Origin: Octopus bimaculoides
Taxonomy: Eukaryota
Direction: 5' to 3'
Length of the DNA: 64,000 bases
NCBI RefSeq assembly: GCF_001194135.2
Contig: NC_068983.1
Span: 146,013,380-146,077,379 of the forward strand
How positions within the stretch are numbered: position 1 is the first letter of the stretch; every line of letters begins with the position of its first letter. The position numbers were made by a program, and so were the translations under genes. This document shows, piece by piece, positions 8,221 to 51,349 of this stretch. The notes below the pieces were generated by a model that worked only from the letters and a program-made list of their open reading frames with translations, made no database searches and was not told the origin of the DNA.

Positions 8221-8828
8221 ATTGATCCCAATTCTTGACTGGTACTTTATGGTACCGATCCCGAAAGGTTGAAAAGCAAAGTTGCCGGCAGCGGAATTAG
8301 AAAAACTCAGAATGTAAATAGCCAGGAGAAACACTAAGTCATTCCCGATGACCTGTCCGCGATATTTTCCGCGTCGGTTTCCAAGTAGTGTGAAGAAAAC
8401 ATTGCCAGTGAGATGTGTCAGCTCTTTCGATGAAAAGAGAACTGTATGAACAGAAGAGTTTAAATGATATTTCTCAGTCGGAAAGGAATTCCACCGAAGT
8501 CGACTTTACTTTTCATCCTTCCAGGGTGGATAACTAAGGAGCAGTTGACTACTGTGATTGATGTATTCATTGATCCAATAGTAGAAAGGATTATTACATT
8601 CTTGCCTAAAACGGCAAGCAGACAGTATCGTTAATGCATCGGACAAAATGCTAAGCAGCATTTCTTCCGTCTCTTCACGTTTTGAGTTCGAATTCCGCCG
8701 TAGTCGACTTTACCTTTCATCCTTCCCGAGTCGATAAAATAAGTACCAGCTGAACACCCGATTCGATGTAATCGACTTACCCCTTCTCCCTAAACATCTG
8801 ACCTTTTGTCAAATTTAGAAAAATTATT
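8221..8828. mobile_element. SINE family A: minus fragments (about 8221-8340, 8460-8540) and a plus copy (about 8610-8828)
   Basis: Core motif gtcgactttacctttcatcc...gtcgataaaataagtaccag. Confidence 0.75.
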
Positions 8829-8989: not shown

Positions 8990-10900
8990 GTGACACTGAT
9001 GTGGTAGATATTCACCTTATGTATGGAGTTGTCTGTATGCAGAGTGGTAATTCCAGTCGGTTATAGTTCTTGGGAAGAAAGAGAGAAATGCTTGGTGTTG
9101 TGGGATTTGGGAGATGATGCAAATCAAGAATTAAGATTGATGAAAGATGGGTGGAATGATTGCACTTAGAGGAAAGTGATGTACAATCTGTTAGTTCGAG
9201 GAGCAGAAAGCGTTGTATTAGTGGTATAACAGCAGAGTGAAGAAAGAGGACGTTTGTAAGCAAATAGTTTATGTTGATAATTGAATTTTTTTTCCAGTCA
9301 GTGAAGTGTAAGTAGTGCTCCGTTTGAGGAAATTAACGTTTCTAGAGAATCAGAAACATATCTGACTAAATTATTTCGTGACTCTAAAGTGGAATGCTAG
9401 TCATTGAGATTTGGTGTTGGCAATGCTTTTTAATAGGATCATCCTCAGTGTTCATCAAAACCTGGTTACGGGGCTATCATTTGAAGAGAAGCTAAGTTTT
9501 CGTTGCGTTATTCGATACAGATTCGTAGTTGGGGAAAGTAATGTGGAATGAGTGATATACTTGAAAAAAAATAAATCAAAGCATGGAAAGATCGTACTAT
9601 AAAGTGGAGGTGATTGTGCGAAAAAATTCTTTCAATGATGTCTCTTTCAGTTGGATTAAAACCTCACCAGGAGTGATTTTGGTTTTCCATACTCTGAGAG
9701 ATAAATATTTATCCAGTATATAGTAGATCGATTCAGTCGATATTATCTTCCAATATAATTTTGGCTTGATGTCAATGTAAAGTATGATTATATGAGAAAT
9801 ACCCACAAACCAATGAAATATTGACTCCTATTGACTTGGAAGAAAACACGAAAAGCATTTACGACATAAGTGAAATGAACTTGGAAATTAAAACCGTTTT
9901 GTAGTTCGAATCTCTCGAATCTTTACCTCTGCTGCACAACGCTTCCTCCCGTAACTTTCAATATGCCCAGTTAATTGAAAGACATTGTTAATCTGGAGGA
10001 AAAGTATCATATTGATTTGTGTAAATCTCTGTAGCAGATATAAACATCATCTGATTAATTTTGTAACTTAATGATATTTCCTGTCTTAATTAATCCATTA
10101 GAAGACAAAAGAACTAACAAATATCAATGCTTAAATATCTCAATTAAATGTAATAAACCTGTCTCGTTTCTGATGTAAGATTGATTACTGCTTCAAAGAG
10201 TATTCATAAGGCAATTGCCGTCTGTAAATCCTTTTCTTCTCTTCCGGTAAAGTTGAAACAAAAGATTTTTCTCTAAGTTTGCAATTGAATTCTCAGGACA
10301 AAAGAAAAGTTTCCTATGCGAATGGAAATAACTAAATAGTATTCTCACTTAATTATTTTCTCCAGAATCTAAACATTTACAAGATACAATATTCAGACAG
10401 ACTTAACTGTTTTTAAGTTTCCTGTAGATATCAGCGTTGTAAAAGAAGTGAATTGACTTTTATCAGAACTCGAAACGGCCATATATATTTGTCTTCTTAT
10501 ACTTTAATATTCATCTTGAACATTATAAATAACGATTTCTAACAGGAACACAAACGTTATGTGGAGGGATATATATTTGATTATATCGTTTACCAGTATG
10601 TGAATGGTAATATGTAATCGACCTGAGAAGGATAATAGGTGAAACTGACCTCAGCAGTATTAAAAAATCAGAACTTAAAATAAAGGGACGTAACTGAATT
10701 CGATAATTCATCATGTCTGAGTTCTGCCGTTCTTTATCTAATGCCTTCTTCTAATCCCCCAACCAATAAAGAACAATACTGATTTCTAACATAGATACAG
10801 AACTCACATTTGTGGAGAGGAGTATTGCCGATTAATCGACCAAGTACTTTATTAGTACTCACTTTACTTACTACAGAAGGGAGAAAGTCAATGATGGCTT
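8990..10900 (-). mobile_element. Highly decayed CR1/L2/Jockey-like LINE remnant
   Basis: The minus strand near 9040-9100 reads KHFSLS-FPRTITDWN across a frameshift, like the SFFPRTxxxWNxLP LINE C-terminus. A TITSTL-like segment lies near 9600 and a degenerate SDD near 10050. Many stops; boundaries uncertain. Confidence 0.5.
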
Positions 10901-31162: not shown

Positions 31163-31197
31163 TATATATAAAAAGAAATCGCTTATCGCCATTCAGT
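31163..31197 (+). promoter_or_regulatory. Core promoter (TATA box + initiator) of the neuropeptide precursor gene
   Basis: TATATATAAAAAG at 31163-31175 and a TCAGT initiator at 31193-31197. The predicted +1 A at 31195 lies 28-30 nt from the TATA box and 77 nt upstream of ATG|GTAAGT. Confidence 0.65.
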
Positions 31198-31271
31198 AGT
31201 CACATACCAAAGCTTCTTCCCCGGATTCTCTAGGACGTCTCAAAATTTTTTTCACAGTATAACCAAGAAGA

Positions 31272-31274
31272 ATG
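31272..31274 (+). CDS. Neuropeptide precursor, exon 1 coding part (start ATG only; exon about 31195-31274)
   Basis: AAGAAGA-ATG is followed directly by a perfect GTAAGT donor (31275-31280). It supplies the phase-0 Met missing from exon 2, giving MVKITSIC..., and has TATA/Inr upstream. No transcript evidence, so another upstream exon cannot be excluded. Confidence 0.65.
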
Positions 31275-32612: not shown

Positions 32613-33670
32613 TGATCTGCTGAAAAGGATTCGATCTGTCAGAGCCATTAGCACGCCGGGTAAAATGATTAGCGGTATTTTGTTCATCTTTACGTTCTGA
32701 GTTCAAATTCCGCCAAGACTGACTTTACTTTTCTGGGTCGACAGAATAAGTACCAGTTGAGTACTGGAATCATCCCCTTCCCCTAAATTGCTGGCCTTGT
32801 GCCAAAATTTGAAACCATTATTAATCTGCTGAAAGGCGGTGAACTGGTTGAATTGTTAGCACGCCGGGCAAATACTTAGCAGTGTTTCATCTGCCGCTAC
32901 GTTCAGAGTTCAAATTTTGCCGAAGTCGACTTTGCCTTTCATCCTTTCATCCTTTCGGGGTCCATAAATTAAGTATCAGAGAAGCACCAAATTTCAGGCC
33001 TTATGCCTATAGTAGAAAGGTTTATTAATCTACTGAAAGGCAGCGAGCTGGCAGAATTGTTAGCACGCCGGGCAAATGCTTAACGCTATTTAATCTGTCT
33101 TGACGTTCGGAGTTCAAATTCCGCTGATGTCGACTTTACTTTCCATCCTTTCCGTGTCGATGAAATAAGTACCAGTCTAGTCCCCTCCCACAAAATTTCA
33201 GGCCTTGTGCCTATAGTAGAAAGGATTATTAATCTGCTGGCAACGGCAGCAAACTAGTAGAATCGTTAGCACGCCGGACAAAATGCTAGGTGGCATTTCA
33301 TCCGTCTTTATATCTTGAGTTCAAATTCTGCCGAAGTCGACTTTTACTTTTATCCTTTCGAGTGTTGATAAAATTAGTATTAGTTGATTAATGGGGTCGT
33401 ATAATCGACTTACTCCGATATTGCTGGCCTTGTACCAAAATTTGAAATCATTATTATTATTAAGCCGGCAGAATTGTTAGCACACCGGCCAAAATGTTTA
33501 GCGACTTTTCGCCTGTCTTTATGTTCTGAGTTCAAATTCCACCGTGGTAGACTTTACTTTTCCTCCTTCCAGTGATCAATAAAATTTGAGTACTACCGGG
33601 GTCGAGGTAATCGTCTAACCTCCTCCCCACATATTTCAGGCTTTGTCTTTATAGTAGAAAGAATTAGTAT
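32613..33670 (+). mobile_element. Head-to-tail array of five SINE family A copies in intron 1
   Basis: Units start at about 32613, 32823, 33027, 33231 and 33460, a period of about 205-230 bp. Confidence 0.85.
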
Positions 33671-34506
33671 TATTTTAGATTTATATTTGTACTTTGTAGA
33701 CATCAATATACATAATATTTGGTGACCTTACGAACATATTGAACTTCCATCAGCCAGAGTTGTCTATGTATCAGTATATGTACGCATAGGCTTGGGCTAG
33801 ATTTTTTGGGTGGAAGCCTGGCAGGTGCCCATACATCCAAGTCTCCACTTTCCTTGCAACTGTTGATTATTCAATATAAAAACTCCCACTTTGGGCCGAT
33901 TTTGGCACCAGTGTCGTCACAGACGTTGCTGTCTGAATGCAAAGAACCGAAACAGACAACCTTAGACATTTCGTTCCAACTCTCAAACCATTCCTCCGAT
34001 TCAGCACCCTAGGTTGGTACTCTAGTAGAAATCTTCAAAAATGTAAATTTGGAGTTTGTGGCTCGATAAAAACGATATGAAAAATCAGTTCACTTGAGAG
34101 ATTAATTTTATGCTAGACATTTTCTGAAATTCAAAATGTGACTCTAATCAGTTGTCAAAGAGTAAATATTAAAGAAAAAATATCGATTCTTATTAAGAGG
34201 TTAATTTTTGTTTCTGTGGATATTGATGGGAGGGCAGAGAGTTCCAATAGATATAAAAAAAAATTTTGAAGAGCTAGAAAGAATATTGTAAAGTAGGAAA
34301 CGTACTTGTTGATAATACATCGTATTCATTTGCAAATGTGACTATATAAATATTAGTTTCAAATTTGGCCAGCAATTTCAGGCGAGGGGTAAGTCGATTA
34401 GATCGACCCCAGTACTCAACTGATATTTATTATTATAATTACGTAATTATATTATGTGATTATATAAATATTAAAATCAAATAATTTATTTTAGAACAAT
34501 TTTAGA

Positions 34507-34720
34507 GCTGCAAACCGGCATAATCGTTAATGCGTCAGACAAAATGTTTGGCGATATTTCTTCTCGCTATTTACGTTCTGAGTTCAAGTGTCACTGAGGT
34601 TGACTTTGCTTTTCTTTTTCCCAGGGCCGATAAAATAAGTACCGGTCAAGCACTGTCGTCGACGTAATTGACTTAATCCCTCCCCTAAAATTACTGGCCT
34701 TATGTTTAAGTTTGAAACCA
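34507..34720 (+). mobile_element. SINE family A copy (with a minus fragment at about 34367-34430)
   Basis: Head and core motifs match the other family A copies. Confidence 0.75.
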
Positions 34721-40228: not shown

Positions 40229-41454
40229 TGTATGTATGTATGTGTGCATTATTTAATGAATAGAAATCAATTTGATTTTAGTCAGGACAAGATTACTATT
40301 TTCGCGTGGGGAGGTTTATAGTTGATTTTACTTAGTTGTTAAATTTCTTTCAAACTGCATCCTACCATCTTAAAGGAAAATACGTTTGCTCAATCAGAAC
40401 TGACATCGAAGTACAGAACATTTGTTACTTTTTATTCAATGCCGGCTAGATTTGATGATAAATTTATCACAGCTATGAAACGAACTCAGAAACTTGATAT
40501 AAGTTACTGTACTGAATCACATCTGGCGCTCCACCGTTTTTGCCAGTTTATTCAAGTCTTACCATCAGACTTAACGTACCGACTATACAGTACATTCACC
40601 CACTAGTGAACTTTTCTTCACTCTAAATATGATTCCCCATCAACGAGTTACAATGTAAATCTAAACTACGTCACTTGAACAGCCGCGTAGCTTCAACATA
40701 TGCATAAGCTCTGTTAATCGTTTATTTTGTGGTTTAAACATAATTACATACTTAAAAGAAATACTTTGCTAATTATCTTCAAAAATCAATATTATTCTAC
40801 TAGATAAAATGGAGTGATCGATTCATTTCAAACTTTATACTTGCGATGCCGTAATATAACATAAATAATATAAAAGATAGAAGCATAATTATTCTTTTAG
40901 GTACACTGACTTCTAACACACGCACAAGTCCTTGCGCATTTCAGAGGAAAAGTGTAGTTGATTACACTTTTGGATTAAATCGATCCCAGGACCTATTTTT
41001 TAAATAAGATTTCATATAGGATTTAGGGAACAATAGAGCCATTATTCAATGATCGGGTCACTCTATTTTACAATTTTAAAAAATGACTAGAGATTGCTTG
41101 TGCAACACAGGCTAAACAAATATCACTCGAAGAATTTTCTTTCGAAAGCAGTGATTTATCAGTTTTCTCACCCCAACACAGCGGCGAAAGAGATACGTTT
41201 ATATGTATGTATATATATATANNNNNNNNNNNNNNNNNNNNNNNNNNNNNNNNNNNNNNNNNNNNNNNNNNNNNNNNNNNNNNNNNNNNNNNNNNNNNNN
41301 NNNNNNNNNNNNNNNNNNNNNNNNNNNNNNNNNNNNNNNNNNNNNNNNNNNNNNNNNNNNNNATATATACATACATATATATATGTACACACACATATAT
41401 AAATATATATATACATACATACATACATACATACATACATACAGCCGAAAATCA

Positions 41455-42190: not shown

Positions 42191-43696
42191 ACCTGCTGTT
42201 GATGTTGAAATTTCAATGAAGGAACCGTGGATCTAGGTTAGAAACCGGTTCTTTCTCTATTGGCAAGAAGTCTTGAAATAAACTGAATAATGACATACAT
42301 ACACACATGCATATATACATACATACATACACACACACATACATACATTCATATATGCACACACATACATACATACATACATACATACATACATACATAC
42401 ACATTTGTTTATGTGTTTCTATGTGTGCGAGGGGCTTTTGCACTGCTTCCGTCTACCAAATTTTATTTGCAACGAATTTGTCAACCTGAGGCAAATATCA
42501 AATGAATAGGAAGCAAACTTAACGACTCCGTAACCATGCCAGCACCCATTATACTGTATGGTAGTTACTTTAGTGACACCAGATAGTTGAAAGGTAGGTA
42601 AAGGATCGTTACTAAATACAGCAAAGCAATCCGTCATTGCCTCTTTGCTTCATATTAGCGATCACTTTCGATTCTTCCTCATCATATGTAATGACTAGTG
42701 GAGTCATGAATGTTAATGAGACAACGACTCCAAAATATTCACTTCTTGAATTTGCTTTTCTTACAGTATCAGTGTCCCAAATAGAACAAGACATCTTCAA
42801 CAAAACAATAAGCAAAGTCTATTAATTAATTTCTTTATAAAGCTAACAATTTACCAGAGTAAGTTGATGGAGTATCTTGGGTATCAATCACTCATTGACA
42901 ATCGGGCTCTTTACTTACAGTCATGGCTTTATATTTATATATATATATATNNNNNNNNNNNNNNNNNNNNNNNNNNNNNNNNNNNNNNNNNNNNNNNNNN
43001 NNNNNNNNNNNNNNNNNNNNNNNNNNNNNNNNNNNNNNNNNNNNNNNNNNNNNNNNNNNNNNNNNNNNNNNNNNNNNNNNNNNNNNNNNNNNNNNNNNNN
43101 NNNNNNNNNNNNNNNNNNNNNNNNNNNNNNNNNNNNNNNNNNNNNNNNNNNNNNNNNNNNNNNNNNNNNNNNNNNNNNNNNNNNNNNNNNNNNNNNNNNN
43201 NNNNNNNNNNNNNNNNNNNNNNNNNNNNNNNNNNNNNNNNNNNNNNNNNNNNNNNNNNNNNNNNNNNNNNNNNNNNNNNNNNNNNNNNNNNNNNNNNNNN
43301 NNNNNNNNNNNNNNNNNNNNNNNNNNNNNNNNNNNNNNNNNNNNNNNNNNNNNNNNNNNNNNNNNNNNNNNNNNNNNNNNNNNNNNNNNNNNNNNNNNNN
43401 NNNNNNNNNNNNNNNNNNNNNNNNNNNNNNNNNNNNNNNNNNNNNNNNNNNNNNNNNNNNNNNNNNNNNNNNNNNNNNNNNNNNNNNNNNNNNNNNNNNN
43501 NNNNNNNNNNNNNNNNNNNNNNNNNNNNNNNNNNNNNNNNNNNNNNNNNNNNNNNNNNNNNNNNNNNNNNNNNNNNNNNNNNNNNNNNNNNNNNNNNNNN
43601 NNNNNNNNNNNNNNNNNNNNNNNNNNNNNNNNNNNNNNNNNNNNNNNNNNNNNNNNNNNNNNATGTGGTTGGTAAGCAAGCTACTTACCACGCAGA

Positions 43697-44925: not shown

Positions 44926-45269
44926 ACGTTTTCATGTCTATATAGTTGTGCGTGTAAAAACGCATCGGTTGGTTCAGGCGGAAGACGGGATAGCCCAGAA
45001 TAAACAAATATTTTAATCGGAATTTACAAACTGAATAGATTTTTGGATCATTATGATTTCTATTGTTTTGTTAATAGGTTGATATTGAATGATAAATTGT
45101 AAAGGTCTGTTTAGATTTCGCCTCAAATACAACAAAATATTTCTATAAAATCAGTGTTTTAAAATGTCCGTTGTATCAAGCTTCCCCCACTTCGGCACTT
45201 TTAAACGCGTACAGTTTTTGTTTCCTAAACTTGTGTTAGAGGAAGAGTAAAGCATATCATAATGATTTC

Positions 45270-45470
45270 TAATTTAGATACAAAGCCAATAATTTCGGGC
45301 AGGAGTGTTTAGTCTATTACATCGCGACCAAGGTTTTATTTTAACGACTTCGGCAGGATGAAAAGTAAAGGTGACCTCAGTGATAATTGAACTCAGAACG
45401 TAAAGTGTCGGAATAAATATCGCGAAGGATATTGCCAGACGTTCTAGTGATTCTTCCAATCTAACATCCT
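45270..45470 (-). mobile_element. SINE family A copy
   Basis: gcaggatgaaaagtaaaggtgacctc...ttgaactcagaacgtaaag. Confidence 0.7.
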
Positions 45471-46534: not shown

Positions 46535-46740
46535 AGGCAGTTAGCTGACAGAATTGTTAGAACGTAGGGTAAAAAAAAATGCTTTGCTGTATTTCTTCAG
46601 TTTCATTACGTTCTGAATTCAAATTTCGCCAAGGTTGACTTTACTTTTCATCCTTTTGGAGTCAAGTGCTGGGATTGATGCAATCGACTTGTCCCTGACC
46701 CTCAAAATAGTTGGCTTTGTATTCAAATTAGAAAGAAATA
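46535..46740 (+). mobile_element. SINE family A copy about 100 bp upstream of the exon 2 acceptor
   Basis: aaggcagttagctgacagaattgttag...ttctgaattcaaatttcgccaaggttgactttacttttcatcc. Confidence 0.8.
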
Positions 46741-46841
46741 TTAATATCAGTTCAATTGAAATTTACAGAATGTTGTGAATGTTTTTGTATTTATTGTTTA
46801 TTTGTGTCTTCAATTTTTATTTTTTATTTTTTTATACTCAG

Positions 46842-47029
46842 GTAAAAATTACGTCCATATGCTTTTGCTTCCTTTTGGGATTGGGAGTATTGTTTGATTC
46901 CTGGGCTGAAGCCGGCTGCGCCAGACCTTGCCTTTTGAGTTTCTTTCGGTGTGTCAGAAGCGTTGAAGAAGAATGCTGTAGTGGTTACAGAACTTGCATG
47001 AAAGATGCCTGTGATGTCGCAAATCCATC
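46842..47029 (+). CDS. Neuropeptide precursor, exon 2 (signal peptide + most of an 8-Cys peptide)
   Basis: Long T-tract ending TACTCAG (acceptor) and GTAAGT donor at 47030. The 188 nt encode VKITSICFCFLLGLGVLFDSWAEA GCARPCLLSFFRCVRSVEEECCSGYRTCMKDACDVANP plus TC. Hydrophobic core with an A-x-A cleavage motif. The phase-2 end matches exon 3 (TC+A = Ser). Confidence 0.9.
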
Positions 47030-47101
47030 GTAAGTACAACTATTTCACTTTCATATAATTAATCCTTGTATCGAACTCTGATTTGTTGGTTCTCTTAGAT
47101 T

Positions 47102-47151
<50 letters not shown>

Positions 47152-48403: not shown

Positions 48404-49121
48404 AAAATATCTTCTATGACAGTTTACGAAAGTTTAACATCGTTACATGTAAACGCAGTTAACGGCAGCCATTTTAATCGTCTGACAACACATTTGCATG
48501 AACTTTTCAAACATTTCTTAAATGGTTTTACCACGATTAGAATGTGTTGCTTGAGAAAAGGGAAGAGTTTCCTAATTGCTTCGCATTTTCGTGAATGATT
48601 AGACAGTTAGAGCTGTCTTTCTCCCCAGATAAATAGAAAATAATTATATAGTTAATTTATCTGGCTAGGAATTGTCTCTTAAAATGAGTGTGTGTGTGTA
48701 CATCATTGTGTATGTATATGTGTGTGTGTGTGTCTGTGTATGTACGTACGTACGTATGTATGTATGTATGTATGTATGTATGTATGTATGTATGTATGTA
48801 CGTATGTATGTATAAAAATATGTGAGATAGAAATTAATTCACGCGACTCTTTATTTAGAGCCACTACGATAGTTTTGACTCATCATGCACCAGTACCTTA
48901 CCGGTAAGATGTACAAACAATTGTCATGCATCATTGGTGCAGATGCGTTTCCTCAAGTGACTTCTGAAAAAATTACCTCGTTTTTTTTTATATCTAGCCG
49001 TTTCGCTTATTTCTATAACAATACACTTTTGGTTAGTGTAGCATATTATCCTTCCTCATAAGGAACTGCGATATTTATGTATGTTTGTATGTATGTATGT
49101 ATGTATGTATGTATGTATATA

Positions 49122-49164
<43 letters not shown>

Positions 49165-50606
49165 NNNNNNNNNNNNNNNNNNNNNNNNNNNNNNNNNNNN
49201 NNNNNNNNNNNNNNNNNNNNNNNNNNNNNNNNNNNNNNNNNNNNNNNNNNNNNNNNNNNNNNNNNNNNNNNNNNNNNNNNNNNNNNNNNNNNNNNNNNNN
49301 NNNNNNNNNNNNNNNNNNNNNNNNNNNNNNNNNNNNNNNNNNNNNNNNNNNNNNNNNNNNNNNNNNNNNNNNNNNNNNNNNNNNNNNNNNNNNNNNNNNN
49401 NNNNNNNNNNNNNNNNNNNNNNNNNNNNNNNNNNNNNNNNNNNNNNNNNNNNNNNNNNNNNNNNNNNNNNNNNNNNNNNNNNCACGCACACGCACACGCA
49501 CACACACACGCACGCACACACACACACACACAAACACGAGCACGATTGTTTTCCATATACTTTTCGTCAACGAAATCCCACTGAAAGTATTGGTAAACCT
49601 ATGGCTGGAAAAAGTAGAAGACTGTACGGTAGTCCCAGCTACCGTACAGTGGGATCGAACTTTGAACCACTTTGTTGCGAAGCGAATTTCTAAATCAGAC
49701 GGCCAGCCATGCCGACACTTCATATAGTTTCGGATAGCATAACTGCACAGAATCACCTTTACCTTGAGTATTTATTCCGTGGTACTTAGCAGACACTGAG
49801 TTTCCTATAACATGATAACTACTTAAAACACATAACAGGTATAAATGACTTTGCAGGAATGATAATGCTATATCTGTAGATACAAACAGCGAGAATGATA
49901 AAGTTAGTGTCTGGCAAAATACCCTGCAATTAATAATTACATTTCTTTACAGTTCAGCTAAGGATTAGTTTGCCTTTCCTCTTTCCCAGTAATATACAAC
50001 CTCCTACAACCTCCTCCACTCCAAACAAACAGTTCTCTCCGTATGTTACTGTAGTAAAACCTATATTTCTGTCAACAAAATGTTTTTACTGTTGTTTAAT
50101 TCCAGATCCTCTCTGATCAAAGAAACTGATGGCGAAAGTCGTTCTAGTTGTGAACATTTCATCTTATTTGGAACTACATTGTCTAATGCATTTCCTTTTA
50201 AGATAGTCAGATATTGTTTGGGGGAGATTTAGTTAGTATTTCTAGTTGGTCTGGTTATGACGTAAAAGCTCCCTAGTTGGCTCGTTCCAGAGTCTCGGTA
50301 ACTCTCAAGGTAACAACGGCCTACATATTTCAAAGCATAAGGTATCCATTTTGGCCCATTTTGCTCTTATTACTGCTGCAAGTAACATTTATTCAAAATA
50401 CTGCATAGTATCAGTGTTACAATATGATGTTACGTTCATCAGGTAAAAGAGATTATCTGCTTTACGTATAAATATCTTGTATGAGAAGTTGAGAAAATCC
50501 AATCTCCTTACTGTAGACCATCCAACTAACACGTTATGGCCTTCGTTTCAGAAGATAGTATCGCAACTTGAGCTCATTATTACTTTTTTTTCTCTTTAAC
50601 TTTTAG

Positions 50607-50838
50607 ATGCAATGATAATGTCGGTAAACGAAGTGGCTGGTATAAACGTGGAAGTTGGGACAAACGTGGAAGCTGGAATAAGAAAAGTGATGATCAAACC
50701 AAACGTGGCAGCTGGAACAAACGTTCGGATGAAGAGGACAGCAAACGAGGCAGCTGGAACAAACGACAAGAAACGGACGACTTCTCTGAGGCAATGCTTA
50801 AGAAAGTCCTTAATGAAAACTATGGAGTCCACTTGTAA
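50607..50838 (+). CDS. Neuropeptide precursor, terminal exon: achatin-like / Ocp-3/Ocp-4 (GSWD, GSWN x3, SGWY) peptides
   Basis: Acceptor TTTTTTTTTCTCTTTAACTTTTAG. The frame from 50608 reads CNDNVGKRSGWYKRGSWDKRGSWNKKSDDQTKRGSWNKRSDEEDSKRGSWNKRQETDDFSEAMLKKVLNENYGVHL*, with TAA at 50836-50838. Repeated tetrapeptides sit between dibasic sites with acidic spacers. GSWD equals the octopus cardioactive peptide Ocp-3/4 (established knowledge). Confidence 0.95.
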
Positions 50839-51070
50839 ACAAATTATACTAATAATACATATATATAGAAACATATGTATATTATGATAAAATGTGAACT
50901 AAACTTTTCCTCTGGGATATTAACTGCATACAAATGGAAAGGATTATTACACGCCGGTTAGCACGAATGCCAAGACATTTCTTCTGTAAGATTCTTCGCA
51001 GCTAACAGTATGGAATTTAAAGGCTCTTCAAACCAACCTGCATTTTAAACATTTCATGCTTTTTTTTTTT

Positions 51071-51076
51071 AATAAA
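51071..51076 (+). terminator. Candidate polyadenylation signal of the neuropeptide gene
   Basis: First AATAAA after the stop codon, about 230 nt downstream, followed by T-rich sequence. A second AATAAA lies at about 51300-51305. Confidence 0.4.
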
Positions 51077-51349
51077 TTCATTTTCCTGAAACCGTTTCTT
51101 TCTTCATCATTTTTAAAAATCATTTATCTGTTATATCTTTTATTTTATACATTACTTTTATTTTTTTACCTTATGATTATCGGATGATCTCTTATTGTTG
51201 TGGATATCAGTAAAAATCTGAACCTGACGAGTTTGGAATCTATATGTATTTTTATTTTGCCTTTCAGGTTGCTATATTAAATATGTTGACTGAACTAGCA
51301 ATAAAGTAAAGAAAATATATACATACATATGTGGGTGCATAATAATGTT

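What the first reader, a model, noticed from the sequence alone, without database searches (positions are those of the whole stretch)
50650..50760. GSWD (Ocp-3/Ocp-4) plus three GSWN copies: candidate L/D-Ser2 isomer peptides
Seen: GSWD at 50650-50661 and GSWN at 50668-50679, 50707-50718 and 50749-50760. They are built from an 18-nt unit (AAACG(T/A)GG(A/C)AG(C/T)TGG(G/A)A(C/T)), which indicates intragenic duplication. Established: GSWD and G-dSer-WD were isolated from Octopus minor brain as cardioactive peptides, and achatin-type peptides are isomerised at residue 2. Inference: GSWN, the majority product here, may also exist as L and D forms and may be the principal ligand.
Basis: partly seen in the sequence, partly recalled or inferred. 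Interest (0 to 1): 0.7.

Follow-up and report, generated by a model that had tools for sequence, protein, structure and literature searches.

The report
Octopus GSWN/GSWD neuropeptide precursor exon
The four GSWD/GSWN repeats are real and sit in the last exon of an annotated Octopus bimaculoides gene for a small secreted neuropeptide precursor; this gene family was described in squid in 2023, so the finding is correct but largely already known.

Summary
GSWD (50650-50661) and three GSWN copies (50668-50679, 50707-50718, 50749-50760) lie in one reading frame. Each is flanked by KR/KK cleavage sites. The 18-nt unit matches 4 times against 0 expected.

They lie in the terminal coding exon (50607-50838) of a three-exon gene:
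- ATG at 31272
- exon 2 at 46842-47029
- exon 3 at 50607-50838

The spliced 140-aa product is 100% identical to Octopus bimaculoides XP_014770093.1, "uncharacterized protein LOC106869081".

Orthologues exist in O. vulgaris/O. sinensis (139/140 identical), Argonauta hians and the squid Todarodes pacificus. A 2023 paper described the squid precursor as "achatin-related", noted the GSWN/GSWD polymorphism and already proposed looking for D-residues.

The architecture fits the mollusc "GSWN" precursor family better than true achatin precursors. The GSWN family is Cys-rich and coexists with achatin in oysters. Comparative data support GSWN as the conserved main product. L/D isomerisation cannot be tested in silico.

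The parts
31163..31176 (+). TATA box (GTATATATAAAAAG) of the gene's promoter
   Evidence: Nearly identical in O. bimaculoides, O. sinensis, O. vulgaris and Argonauta hians: 13 of 14 positions, with one A/G difference in Argonauta (alignment A3).
31195..31274 (+). Exon 1: about 77 nt of 5'UTR plus the ATG start codon (31272-31274), followed by donor GTAAGT. The start at 31195 is inferred from a conserved TCAGT initiator-like motif about 32 nt after the TATA box.
   Evidence: ATG|GTAAGT was the only perfect-donor candidate found. It coincides with the annotated CDS start of the O. sinensis and O. vulgaris orthologues (locus position 10001). The region is conserved in Argonauta. The transcription start site itself is an inference.
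46842..47029 (+). Exon 2: residues V2-A23 (rest of the signal peptide; cleavage after SWA is inferred) and E24 to the first two bases of S64, the 8-Cys domain. Acceptor ...tatactcag|, donor TC|gtaagt.
   Evidence: Sequence; splice and translation. tblastn gives 100% identity to P0001 and 60% to Todarodes. 99.5% identical in O. sinensis and O. vulgaris, with one synonymous change.
50607..50625 (+). Start of exon 3: last base of S64, then CNDNV and G70. This is the end of the Cys-rich peptide (E24-V69), with Gly as amide donor ahead of KR.
   Evidence: The G-KR signal is also present in Todarodes (DDRL-G-KR) and in the paralogue P0003 (YPF-G-KR).
50626..50643 (+).
   Evidence: Identical in O. 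vulgaris/O. sinensis. The aligned position is GSWN in Todarodes and SEYD in Argonauta.
50644..50661 (+). Unit 1: KR-GSWD (GSWD at 50650-50661).
50662..50685 (+). Unit 2: KR-GSWN-KK (GSWN at 50668-50679).
50701..50724 (+). Unit 3: KR-GSWN-KR (GSWN at 50707-50718), preceded by the spacer peptide SDDQT (50686-50700).
50743..50766 (+). Unit 4: KR-GSWN-KR (GSWN at 50749-50760), preceded by the spacer peptide SDEEDS (50725-50742). This is the copy that stays intact in Argonauta.
50767..50838 (+). C-terminal 23-aa peptide QETDDFSEAMLKKVLNENYGVHL plus the stop codon TAA (50836-50838).
   Evidence: The core is conserved across cephalopods: AMLKK[VI][LI]NE in octopods and AILRRLLLE in the squid Todarodes. 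Predicted helix at residues 123-136, at low confidence.
51071..51076 (+). Likely polyadenylation signal AATAAA, giving a 3'UTR of about 240 nt.
   Evidence: It lies in a 30-nt block (51062-51091) that is 93% identical in Argonauta.

Best explanation
The region is the peptide-encoding last exon of Octopus bimaculoides gene LOC106869081, a 140-residue prepro-neuropeptide.

Shown:
- The gene has three coding exons, and the spliced product equals the NCBI model XP_014770093.1.
- The protein starts with a hydrophobic signal sequence.
- An 8-cysteine segment follows, ending in Gly-Lys-Arg.
- Five tetrapeptide units follow (SGWY, GSWD, GSWN x3), each bracketed by Lys-Arg or Lys-Lys.
- A conserved C-terminal peptide ends the protein.
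- The whole structure is conserved in other octopods and in a squid, with mostly synonymous change.

Inferred from established prohormone processing:
- The signal peptide is removed in the ER, and the Cys-rich segment forms disulfides.
- Prohormone convertases cut after the dibasic pairs, and a carboxypeptidase trims the basic residues.
- This releases free-acid tetrapeptides, one GSWD and three GSWN per precursor plus SGWY, because no Gly follows them.
- It also releases a C-terminally amidated Cys-rich peptide and the 23-aa C-terminal peptide.

Inferred by analogy and not testable here:
- A neuronal peptidyl L/D isomerase converts part of the pool at residue 2 (Ser), as reported for GSWD in Octopus minor.
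- The peptides act on a GPCR.

By family, the gene belongs with the cephalopod 'achatin-related' GSWN/GSWD precursors. It most likely also belongs to the wider mollusc 'GSWN' precursor family, not to the true achatin (GF-x-D) gene.
For: Gene model:
- Acceptor and reading frame. Exon 2. ATG|GTAAGT exon 1.
- The spliced 140 aa is 100% identical over 100% of its length to XP_014770093.1.

Orthologues:
- O. vulgaris/O. sinensis: 139/140 identical.
- Argonauta hians: 55% identity by BLASTP, 62% in the pairwise MAFFT alignment.
- Todarodes: 59% identity, same layout with six copies.

Selection: 5 differences in 420 coding nt between O. bimaculoides and O. sinensis/O. vulgaris, of which 4 are synonymous and 1 is D->E.

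Conservation: all three exons, the TATA box and the polyA-signal block are conserved.

Repeat significance: 4 matches against 0 expected.

GSWN family:
- The Nucella lapillus precursor carries about ten GSWN-KR repeats behind a Cys-containing N-terminus.
- The oyster Cragi-GSWN precursor is described with an N-terminal Cys-rich peptide, a Cys-rich amidated peptide, strictly conserved GSWN and a C-terminal peptide (PMC8398477).

Expression: the squid orthologue is expressed in brain (PMC10172372).

Isomerisation in mollusc neuropeptides occurs at residue 2 or 3 across varied residues, and isomerase activity acts on the tetrapeptide GFFD (PMC11277431).
Against: - No peptide-level or expression data exist for this species in what I could reach.
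- The Ocp-3/Ocp-4 sequences could not be checked in the source paper.
- Only GSWD, not GSWN, is recalled as isolated by heart bioassay. GSWN might therefore be inactive on the heart or simply have been missed.
- Similarity of the Cys-rich domain to the one non-cephalopod relative available (Nucella) is weak: 5.7 bits with pairwise E about 1e-3, and hhalign P 0.037. The link to the oyster GSWN family therefore rests mainly on the published description.
- No oyster, Aplysia or Lottia sequence could be retrieved.
- Pfam finds no domain, and the structure model is low-confidence (mean pLDDT 54).
Confidence: 0.82

Rival explanations
1. It is a true achatin-family gene: a diverged paralogue of the GF-x-D achatin precursor whose products act, as D-forms, on achatin-type receptors. 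This matches the first reader's framing and the 'achatin-related' name given in 2023.
For: The products share a format: short acidic G-x-x-D/N tetrapeptides repeated between KR sites. Oyster achatin precursors give GFWD, one residue away from GSWD (PMC4200219). A chiton achatin precursor also mixes D with N/Q variants (GFGD, GFGN, GFGQ). A D-residue at position 2 is recalled for Ocp-4. The achatin receptor responds only to D-forms (PMC10089201).
Against: The chiton achatin precursor has no Cys-rich domain, and the profile comparison shows no similarity to this gene's N-terminal domain (E 0.3-0.8). The 1.84-billion-protein HMM search with the octopod profile returned no achatin precursor. Oysters carry separate achatin and GSWN genes. 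Position 2 is Ser, not the aromatic residue of achatins. Four-residue motifs between KR sites converge easily.
Confidence: 0.15
2. The main bioactive product is the disulfide-rich amidated N-terminal peptide, or the conserved C-terminal peptide. On this view the GSW[DN] units are secondary products or spacers.
For: The 8 cysteines are invariant across all seven cephalopod sequences, including paralogues that have lost the tetrapeptides: P0003/P0009 keep only GNYD/GNDD, and P0005 has none. The G-KR amidation signal is conserved in Octopus, Todarodes and the paralogue. Argonauta has let most tetrapeptide copies decay. In the oyster, mass spectrometry detected the C-terminal peptide, not GSWN.
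Against: GSWN is retained from bivalves to cephalopods and amplified independently, with about ten copies in Nucella and six in Todarodes. Changes within the units are synonymous. GSWD is recalled as isolated from octopus brain as an active peptide. The two roles are not mutually exclusive.
Confidence: 0.25
3. The repeats are a chance or non-coding feature, such as a simple repeat or a pseudo-exon.
For: Tandem Repeats Finder finds no array. The exon-only protein search found nothing.
Against: The pattern gives 4 matches against 0 expected. The spliced product is an exact match to an annotated protein. The gene is conserved, with synonymous-biased change, in three other species, and a brain transcript exists in squid.
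Confidence: 0.01

Closest known systems
Todarodes pacificus 'achatin-related' neuropeptide precursor (TRINITY_DN1065_c0_g3; Sci Rep 2023, PMC10172372)
   Same: It starts with MVK, then has a signal peptide, the same 8-Cys pattern, G-KR, a run of KR-flanked GSWN/GSWD units and a C-terminal ...ENYG..L peptide. Identity is 59%. It is expressed in brain.
   Different: The squid has six units (N, D, D, N, N, N), the first an intact GSWN. The octopus has five, the first degenerated to SGWY. The paper did not connect the peptides to Ocp-3/Ocp-4 (no such citation) or to the oyster GSWN family.
Mollusc 'GSWN' precursor family (Cragi-GSWN, LOC105336174; Mar Drugs 2021, PMC8398477)
   Same: [quoted passage not shown] The Nucella lapillus relative found here has C-x3-C-x6-C directly after its signal peptide, as in the octopus, and many GSWN-KR repeats.
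   Different: Bivalve precursors are described with a single GSWN copy, whereas cephalopods and Nucella have several. GSWD and SGWY variants were seen only in cephalopods.
Achatin / achatin-like precursors (achatin-I G-dF-AD; GFGD, GFFD, GFWD)
   Same: Free-acid tetrapeptides beginning with Gly and ending in Asp, repeated between dibasic sites. Residue 2 is isomerised in known members, and D-form-only receptor activation is known.
   Different: The achatin precursor example has no Cys-rich domain and no detectable similarity to this gene outside the motif format. Residue 2 is Ser here rather than Phe or Tyr. Most copies end in Asn.
Ocp-3 / Ocp-4 of Octopus minor (Iwakoshi, Hisada & Minakata 2000, Peptides 21:623)
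   Same: That equals unit 1 of this precursor, which would make this gene's O. minor orthologue their source.
   Different: The species differs. The sequences could not be verified from held text. GSWN and SGWY were not reported there, as far as I recall.

Membership tests
Cephalopod GSWN/GSWD ('achatin-related') precursors | N-terminal signal peptide followed by a domain with eight cysteines at conserved positions | tested here: met
   C27, C31, C38, C46, C47, C53, C58 and C65 are invariant in the 7-sequence alignment A2.
Cephalopod GSWN/GSWD ('achatin-related') precursors | Several GSW[ND] tetrapeptides flanked by dibasic cleavage sites | tested here: met
   One GSWD and three GSWN, each KR-/-K[KR] flanked. 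The layout is collinear with Todarodes.
Cephalopod GSWN/GSWD ('achatin-related') precursors | Conserved C-terminal peptide (…A[MI]L[KR][KR]…ENYG…L) | tested here: met
   Alignment A2.
Mollusc GSWN precursor family (Cragi-GSWN) | Strictly conserved GSWN peptide between cleavage sites | tested here: met
   Three KR-GSWN-K[KR] units. The family description is in PMC8398477.
Mollusc GSWN precursor family (Cragi-GSWN) | Cysteine-rich peptide with a C-terminal amidation signal | tested here: met
   ...CNDNV-G-KR at 50608-50631.
Mollusc GSWN precursor family (Cragi-GSWN) | Cysteine positions shared with the bivalve and gastropod members | tested here: inconclusive
   Only Nucella was available. The match is weak but collinear: AGCA.PCL.SF..C against SDCAAACLQSLDQC (hmmsearch 5.7 bits, pairwise E 1e-3; hhalign P 0.037). 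The oyster, Aplysia and Lottia sequences are shown only as images in the paper.
Achatin family | Repeated G-[F/Y]-x-D tetrapeptides (aromatic residue 2) between dibasic sites | tested here: not met
   Residue 2 is Ser and most copies end in Asn. Only the format is shared, namely a Gly1 tetrapeptide between KR sites.
Achatin family | Precursor homologous to known achatin precursors | tested here: not met
   No similarity to the chiton achatin precursor. No achatin precursor appeared among the hits of the profile search of 1.84 billion proteins. Only one achatin precursor was compared.
Achatin family | L-to-D isomerisation at residue 2, and activation of the achatin GPCR by the D-form only | not testable with these tools
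   Needs chiral peptidomics and receptor assays. Background is in PMC10089201 and PMC11277431.
Ocp-3/Ocp-4 (Octopus minor cardioactive peptides) | Peptide sequence Gly-Ser-Trp-Asp (L- or D-Ser) | not tested
   GSWD is encoded at 50650-50661. The published sequences could not be read: the paper is not held and only citations were found.

The most novel reading that the evidence does not exclude
GSWN is the ancestral ligand of a second tetrapeptide signalling system in molluscs that is independent of achatin. This system would be conserved from bivalves to cephalopods, use L-to-D isomerisation of Ser2 as an activity switch, and act on a still-orphan GPCR. On this view the octopus cardioactive peptides Ocp-3 and Ocp-4 are a lineage-specific Asp variant of it, and the co-released amidated Cys-rich peptide is a further, unstudied hormone.
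Probability: 0.25. Interest if true: 0.6.

Novelty: already known. Interest (0 to 1): 0.33.

Why it matters
Few animal neuropeptide families with a D-amino acid have a known receptor; PMC10089201 counts three receptors, serving two peptide systems. If the Ocp-3/Ocp-4 recollection is correct, this gene's O. minor orthologue is their precursor, which would give a concrete handle for several experiments:
- in situ probes for the producing neurons;
- a defined peptide set (GSWN, GSWD, SGWY, the Cys-rich amide, the C-terminal peptide) for chiral mass spectrometry;
- ligands for receptor deorphanisation in a model octopus.

The practical correction is that receptor searches should not be limited to achatin-receptor orthologues, because the precursor looks like a member of the separate mollusc GSWN family. 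I found no held paper that connects the three threads: Ocp-3/4, the cephalopod 'achatin-related' precursor and the oyster 'GSWN' precursor. Linking them is modest synthesis, not a new kind of system.

Tried and rejected
1. A signal-peptide-like ORF at 34530 (MRQTKCLAIFLLAIYVLSSS...) was my first candidate for the upstream exon. I rejected it because it lies in an interspersed repeat with at least 15 diverged copies in the window, and the true exon 2 was identified from the Todarodes sequence.
2. An in-frame ATG at 46779 reads through the polypyrimidine tract of intron 1. I rejected it in favour of ATG|GTAAGT at 31272, because orthologues begin M-VK and the annotated start coincides.
3. Tandem Repeats Finder found no array.
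4. A homology search with exon 3 alone found nothing.
5. Pfam gave no significant domain. The UniProt automatic names 'SMB domain-containing' and 'WAP domain-containing' are therefore not supported here.
6. AlphaFold2 on a two-sequence alignment gave mean pLDDT 54. That is too low for a meaningful fold search, so none was run.
7. A search with a chiton achatin precursor, meant to locate an octopus GFGD gene, returned only Capitella and one unnamed protein. Whether O. bimaculoides has a separate achatin gene was therefore not established.
8. The Nucella gene structure could not be fetched.
9. The tandem paralogue (KR-GNYD-KR) is not in the window. In O. vulgaris it lies about 48 kb from the gene.
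10. Searches for the Ocp peptide names and sequences found no confirming text.

Full report
**Observation**

The window is AT-rich (36% GC) draft eukaryotic sequence with 16 N gaps. At the reported coordinates the + strand reads, in one frame: CNDNVGKR-SGWY-KR-GSWD-KR-GSWN-KK-SDDQT-KR-GSWN-KR-SDEEDS-KR-GSWN-KR-QETDDFSEAMLKKVLNENYGVHL-stop.

- The units differ only at synonymous third positions, plus the G/A change that toggles Asp and Asn.
- A fifth unit, KR-SGWY (50626-50643), was overlooked.
- TRF sees no array because the spacers are unequal.

**Gene model**

- A strong acceptor (polypyrimidine tract plus AG at 50605-50606) opens the exon one base before the frame. The upstream exon must therefore end two bases into a codon.
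- The supplementary table of a 2023 squid paper gives the Todarodes pacificus 'achatin-related' precursor.
- Its N-terminal half matched an ORF at 46842-47029. That ORF is bounded by ...tatactcag| and TC|gtaagt.
- Squid and octopus both begin M-VK, so the ATG had to sit at the end of a further upstream exon.
- The only ATG followed by a perfect GTAAGT donor is at 31272. A TATA box lies about 100 nt upstream.
- The spliced 140-aa product is 100% identical over its full length to XP_014770093.1, 'uncharacterized protein LOC106869081 [Octopus bimaculoides]'.
- The window is therefore O. bimaculoides, and the finding lies in the gene's last coding exon.

**Conservation**

- O. vulgaris and O. sinensis encode a protein identical at 139 of 140 positions.
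- Their loci and that of Argonauta hians contain all three exons, and the annotated start coincides with the window's ATG.
- Across 420 coding nt, O. bimaculoides differs from O. sinensis/O. vulgaris at 5 sites. Four are synonymous and one is D->E in the C-terminal peptide. Flanking non-coding sequence is 94-97% identical.
- The TATA box is nearly identical in all four species, with one A/G difference in Argonauta. A TCAGT initiator-like motif is identical in all four.
- A 30-nt block around the AATAAA at 51071 is 93% identical in Argonauta.
- In Argonauta only the last KR-GSWN-KK unit keeps both cleavage sites. The other positions read GNWNHA, ASWDET and GSWDEI.
- Todarodes has six units: N, D, D, N, N, N.
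- The intragenic duplication therefore predates the octopus-squid split. G1 varies only in degenerate copies, S2 is mostly conserved, and W3 is conserved in all but the degenerate first unit. The D/N position toggles.

**Wider family**

A profile search of 1.84 billion representative proteins found very few relatives.

- A 95-aa O. bimaculoides paralogue with the same Cys domain and KR-GNYD-KR. Its O. vulgaris counterpart is the neighbouring annotated gene, about 48 kb away and outside this window.
- A Cys-domain-only paralogue in O. vulgaris.
- A 294-aa Nucella lapillus (gastropod) protein with about ten R-GSWN-KR-QPI repeats. Its N-terminus reads C-x3-C-x6-C directly after the signal peptide.

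The oyster neuropeptidome paper defines a mollusc-specific 'GSWN' precursor. It describes an N-terminal Cys-rich peptide, a Cys-rich amidated peptide, a strictly conserved GSWN and a C-terminal peptide. It reports homologues in Crassostrea virginica, Patinopecten (now Mizuhopecten) yessoensis, Lottia and Aplysia.

The octopus protein has each of these elements, including Gly-Lys-Arg after the Cys-rich segment. Direct similarity of the Cys domain to Nucella is weak but collinear. The oyster sequences were not retrievable. I rate membership of that wider family as likely, not proven.

**Achatin or not**

- A true achatin precursor (chiton, GFGD copies with GFGN and GFGQ variants) has no Cys-rich domain and no similarity to the octopus N-terminal profile.
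- Oysters carry a true achatin gene (GFWD/GFGD) alongside the separate GSWN gene.
- The gene therefore works like an achatin precursor: repeated Gly-initiated free-acid tetrapeptides between dibasic sites, plausibly isomerised at residue 2.
- It fails the tested membership features, namely aromatic residue 2 and precursor homology.
- Only one achatin precursor was compared, and a search for an octopus GFGD gene found nothing usable.

**Mechanism**

Shown: the gene structure, the signal-like N-terminus, the eight invariant cysteines, the dibasic flanks, the absence of a C-terminal Gly on the tetrapeptides, the presence of Gly-Lys-Arg after the Cys-rich segment, and purifying selection.

Inferred from standard prohormone processing: signal cleavage after SWA23, convertase and carboxypeptidase processing, and amidation of the Cys-rich peptide. 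The predicted products per precursor are:
- one SGWY, one GSWD and three GSWN as free acids;
- spacers SDDQT and SDEEDS;
- one 46-aa amidated 8-Cys peptide;
- one 23-aa C-terminal peptide.

The AlphaFold model fits this picture at low confidence. It shows two helices in the Cys domain (pLDDT about 75), a disordered repeat region (pLDDT below 50) and a C-terminal helix.

Inferred by analogy only: L-to-D conversion of Ser2. In Aplysia the D-residue is at position 2 or 3 with varied residue types. CNS extracts isomerise the tetrapeptide GFFD. The achatin receptor responds only to D-forms.

**Literature and novelty**

- The 2023 squid paper states that the deposited cephalopod homologues all encode four to six peptides 'polymorphic with GSWN or GSWD'. 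Its authors say they intend to look for D-residues. Both the observation and the hypothesis are thus already in print.
- That paper does not cite the Octopus minor Ocp work and calls its own result the first report in a cephalopod.
- No held paper contains LOC106869081.
- The claim that Ocp-3/Ocp-4 are GSWD and G-dS-WD matches my recollection, but I could not verify it from text.
- What this analysis adds: the exact gene model in O. bimaculoides, the SGWY unit, the amidated Cys-rich co-product, the comparative argument that GSWN is the conserved product, and the re-assignment from 'achatin-type' to the mollusc GSWN family.

**Verdict**

The feature is real and correctly read, biologically sensible and already known in kind. 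The L/D question remains open and needs experiments.

Noticed in passing
window 50626-50643: A fifth repeat unit encodes KR-SGWY. It looks like GSWN with Gly and Ser swapped and a Tyr at the end. It is identical in O. vulgaris/O. sinensis, reads GSWN in squid and SEYD in Argonauta. If processed, it would give a novel tetrapeptide SGWY of unknown activity.
   Followed up: partly
window 46908-47029 + 50607-50625: The precursor also encodes a 46-residue peptide with eight invariant cysteines, ending in Gly-Lys-Arg, a C-terminal amidation signal. It is the part best conserved among paralogues and may be a hormone in its own right. Pfam finds no domain, although UniProt auto-names the proteins 'SMB domain-containing' and 'WAP domain-containing'.
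   Followed up: partly
window 31163-31197: TATA box (GTATATATAAAAAG) and a TCAGT initiator-like motif about 32 nt downstream. The TCAGT motif is identical and the TATA box nearly so (one A/G difference in Argonauta) across O. bimaculoides, O. sinensis, O. vulgaris and Argonauta hians. This is a well-defined core promoter for a neuropeptide gene.
   Followed up: partly
window 34480-34720 (copies at e.g. 8614-8821, 45263-45441, 33050-33180, 46576-46649): An interspersed repeat family with at least 15 copies of about 70% identity in the window. One copy carries an ORF that mimics a signal peptide (MRQTKCLAIFLLAIYVLSSS) and could mislead exon hunting.
   Followed up: yes
L004 (O. vulgaris OX597816.1, about 48 kb from the orthologue in L002); not in the window: A tandem paralogue of 95 aa with the same Cys-rich domain but a single tetrapeptide: KR-GNYD-KR in O. 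bimaculoides, degraded to KR-GNDD-TR in O. vulgaris. A third, Cys-domain-only paralogue lies about ten annotated genes away in O. vulgaris.
   Followed up: partly
window 47098-47150, 48684-48810, 49046-49560 and elsewhere: Abundant microsatellites, (GATA)n and (TG/CA)n-type, and 16 assembly gaps totalling 4,982 N. These include gaps in intron 1 of the gene (e.g. 41222-41362, 42951-43662) and one in intron 2 (49165-49482).
   Followed up: no
P0004 (Nucella lapillus KAL8591767.1): A gastropod precursor with about ten GSWN copies, mostly preceded by a single Arg (E-R-GSWN-KR-QPI). Some copies have decayed (TESWNKQ, SGNWNKR, SQNWVNQ). GSWN copy number therefore appears to have expanded independently outside cephalopods.
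   Followed up: partly
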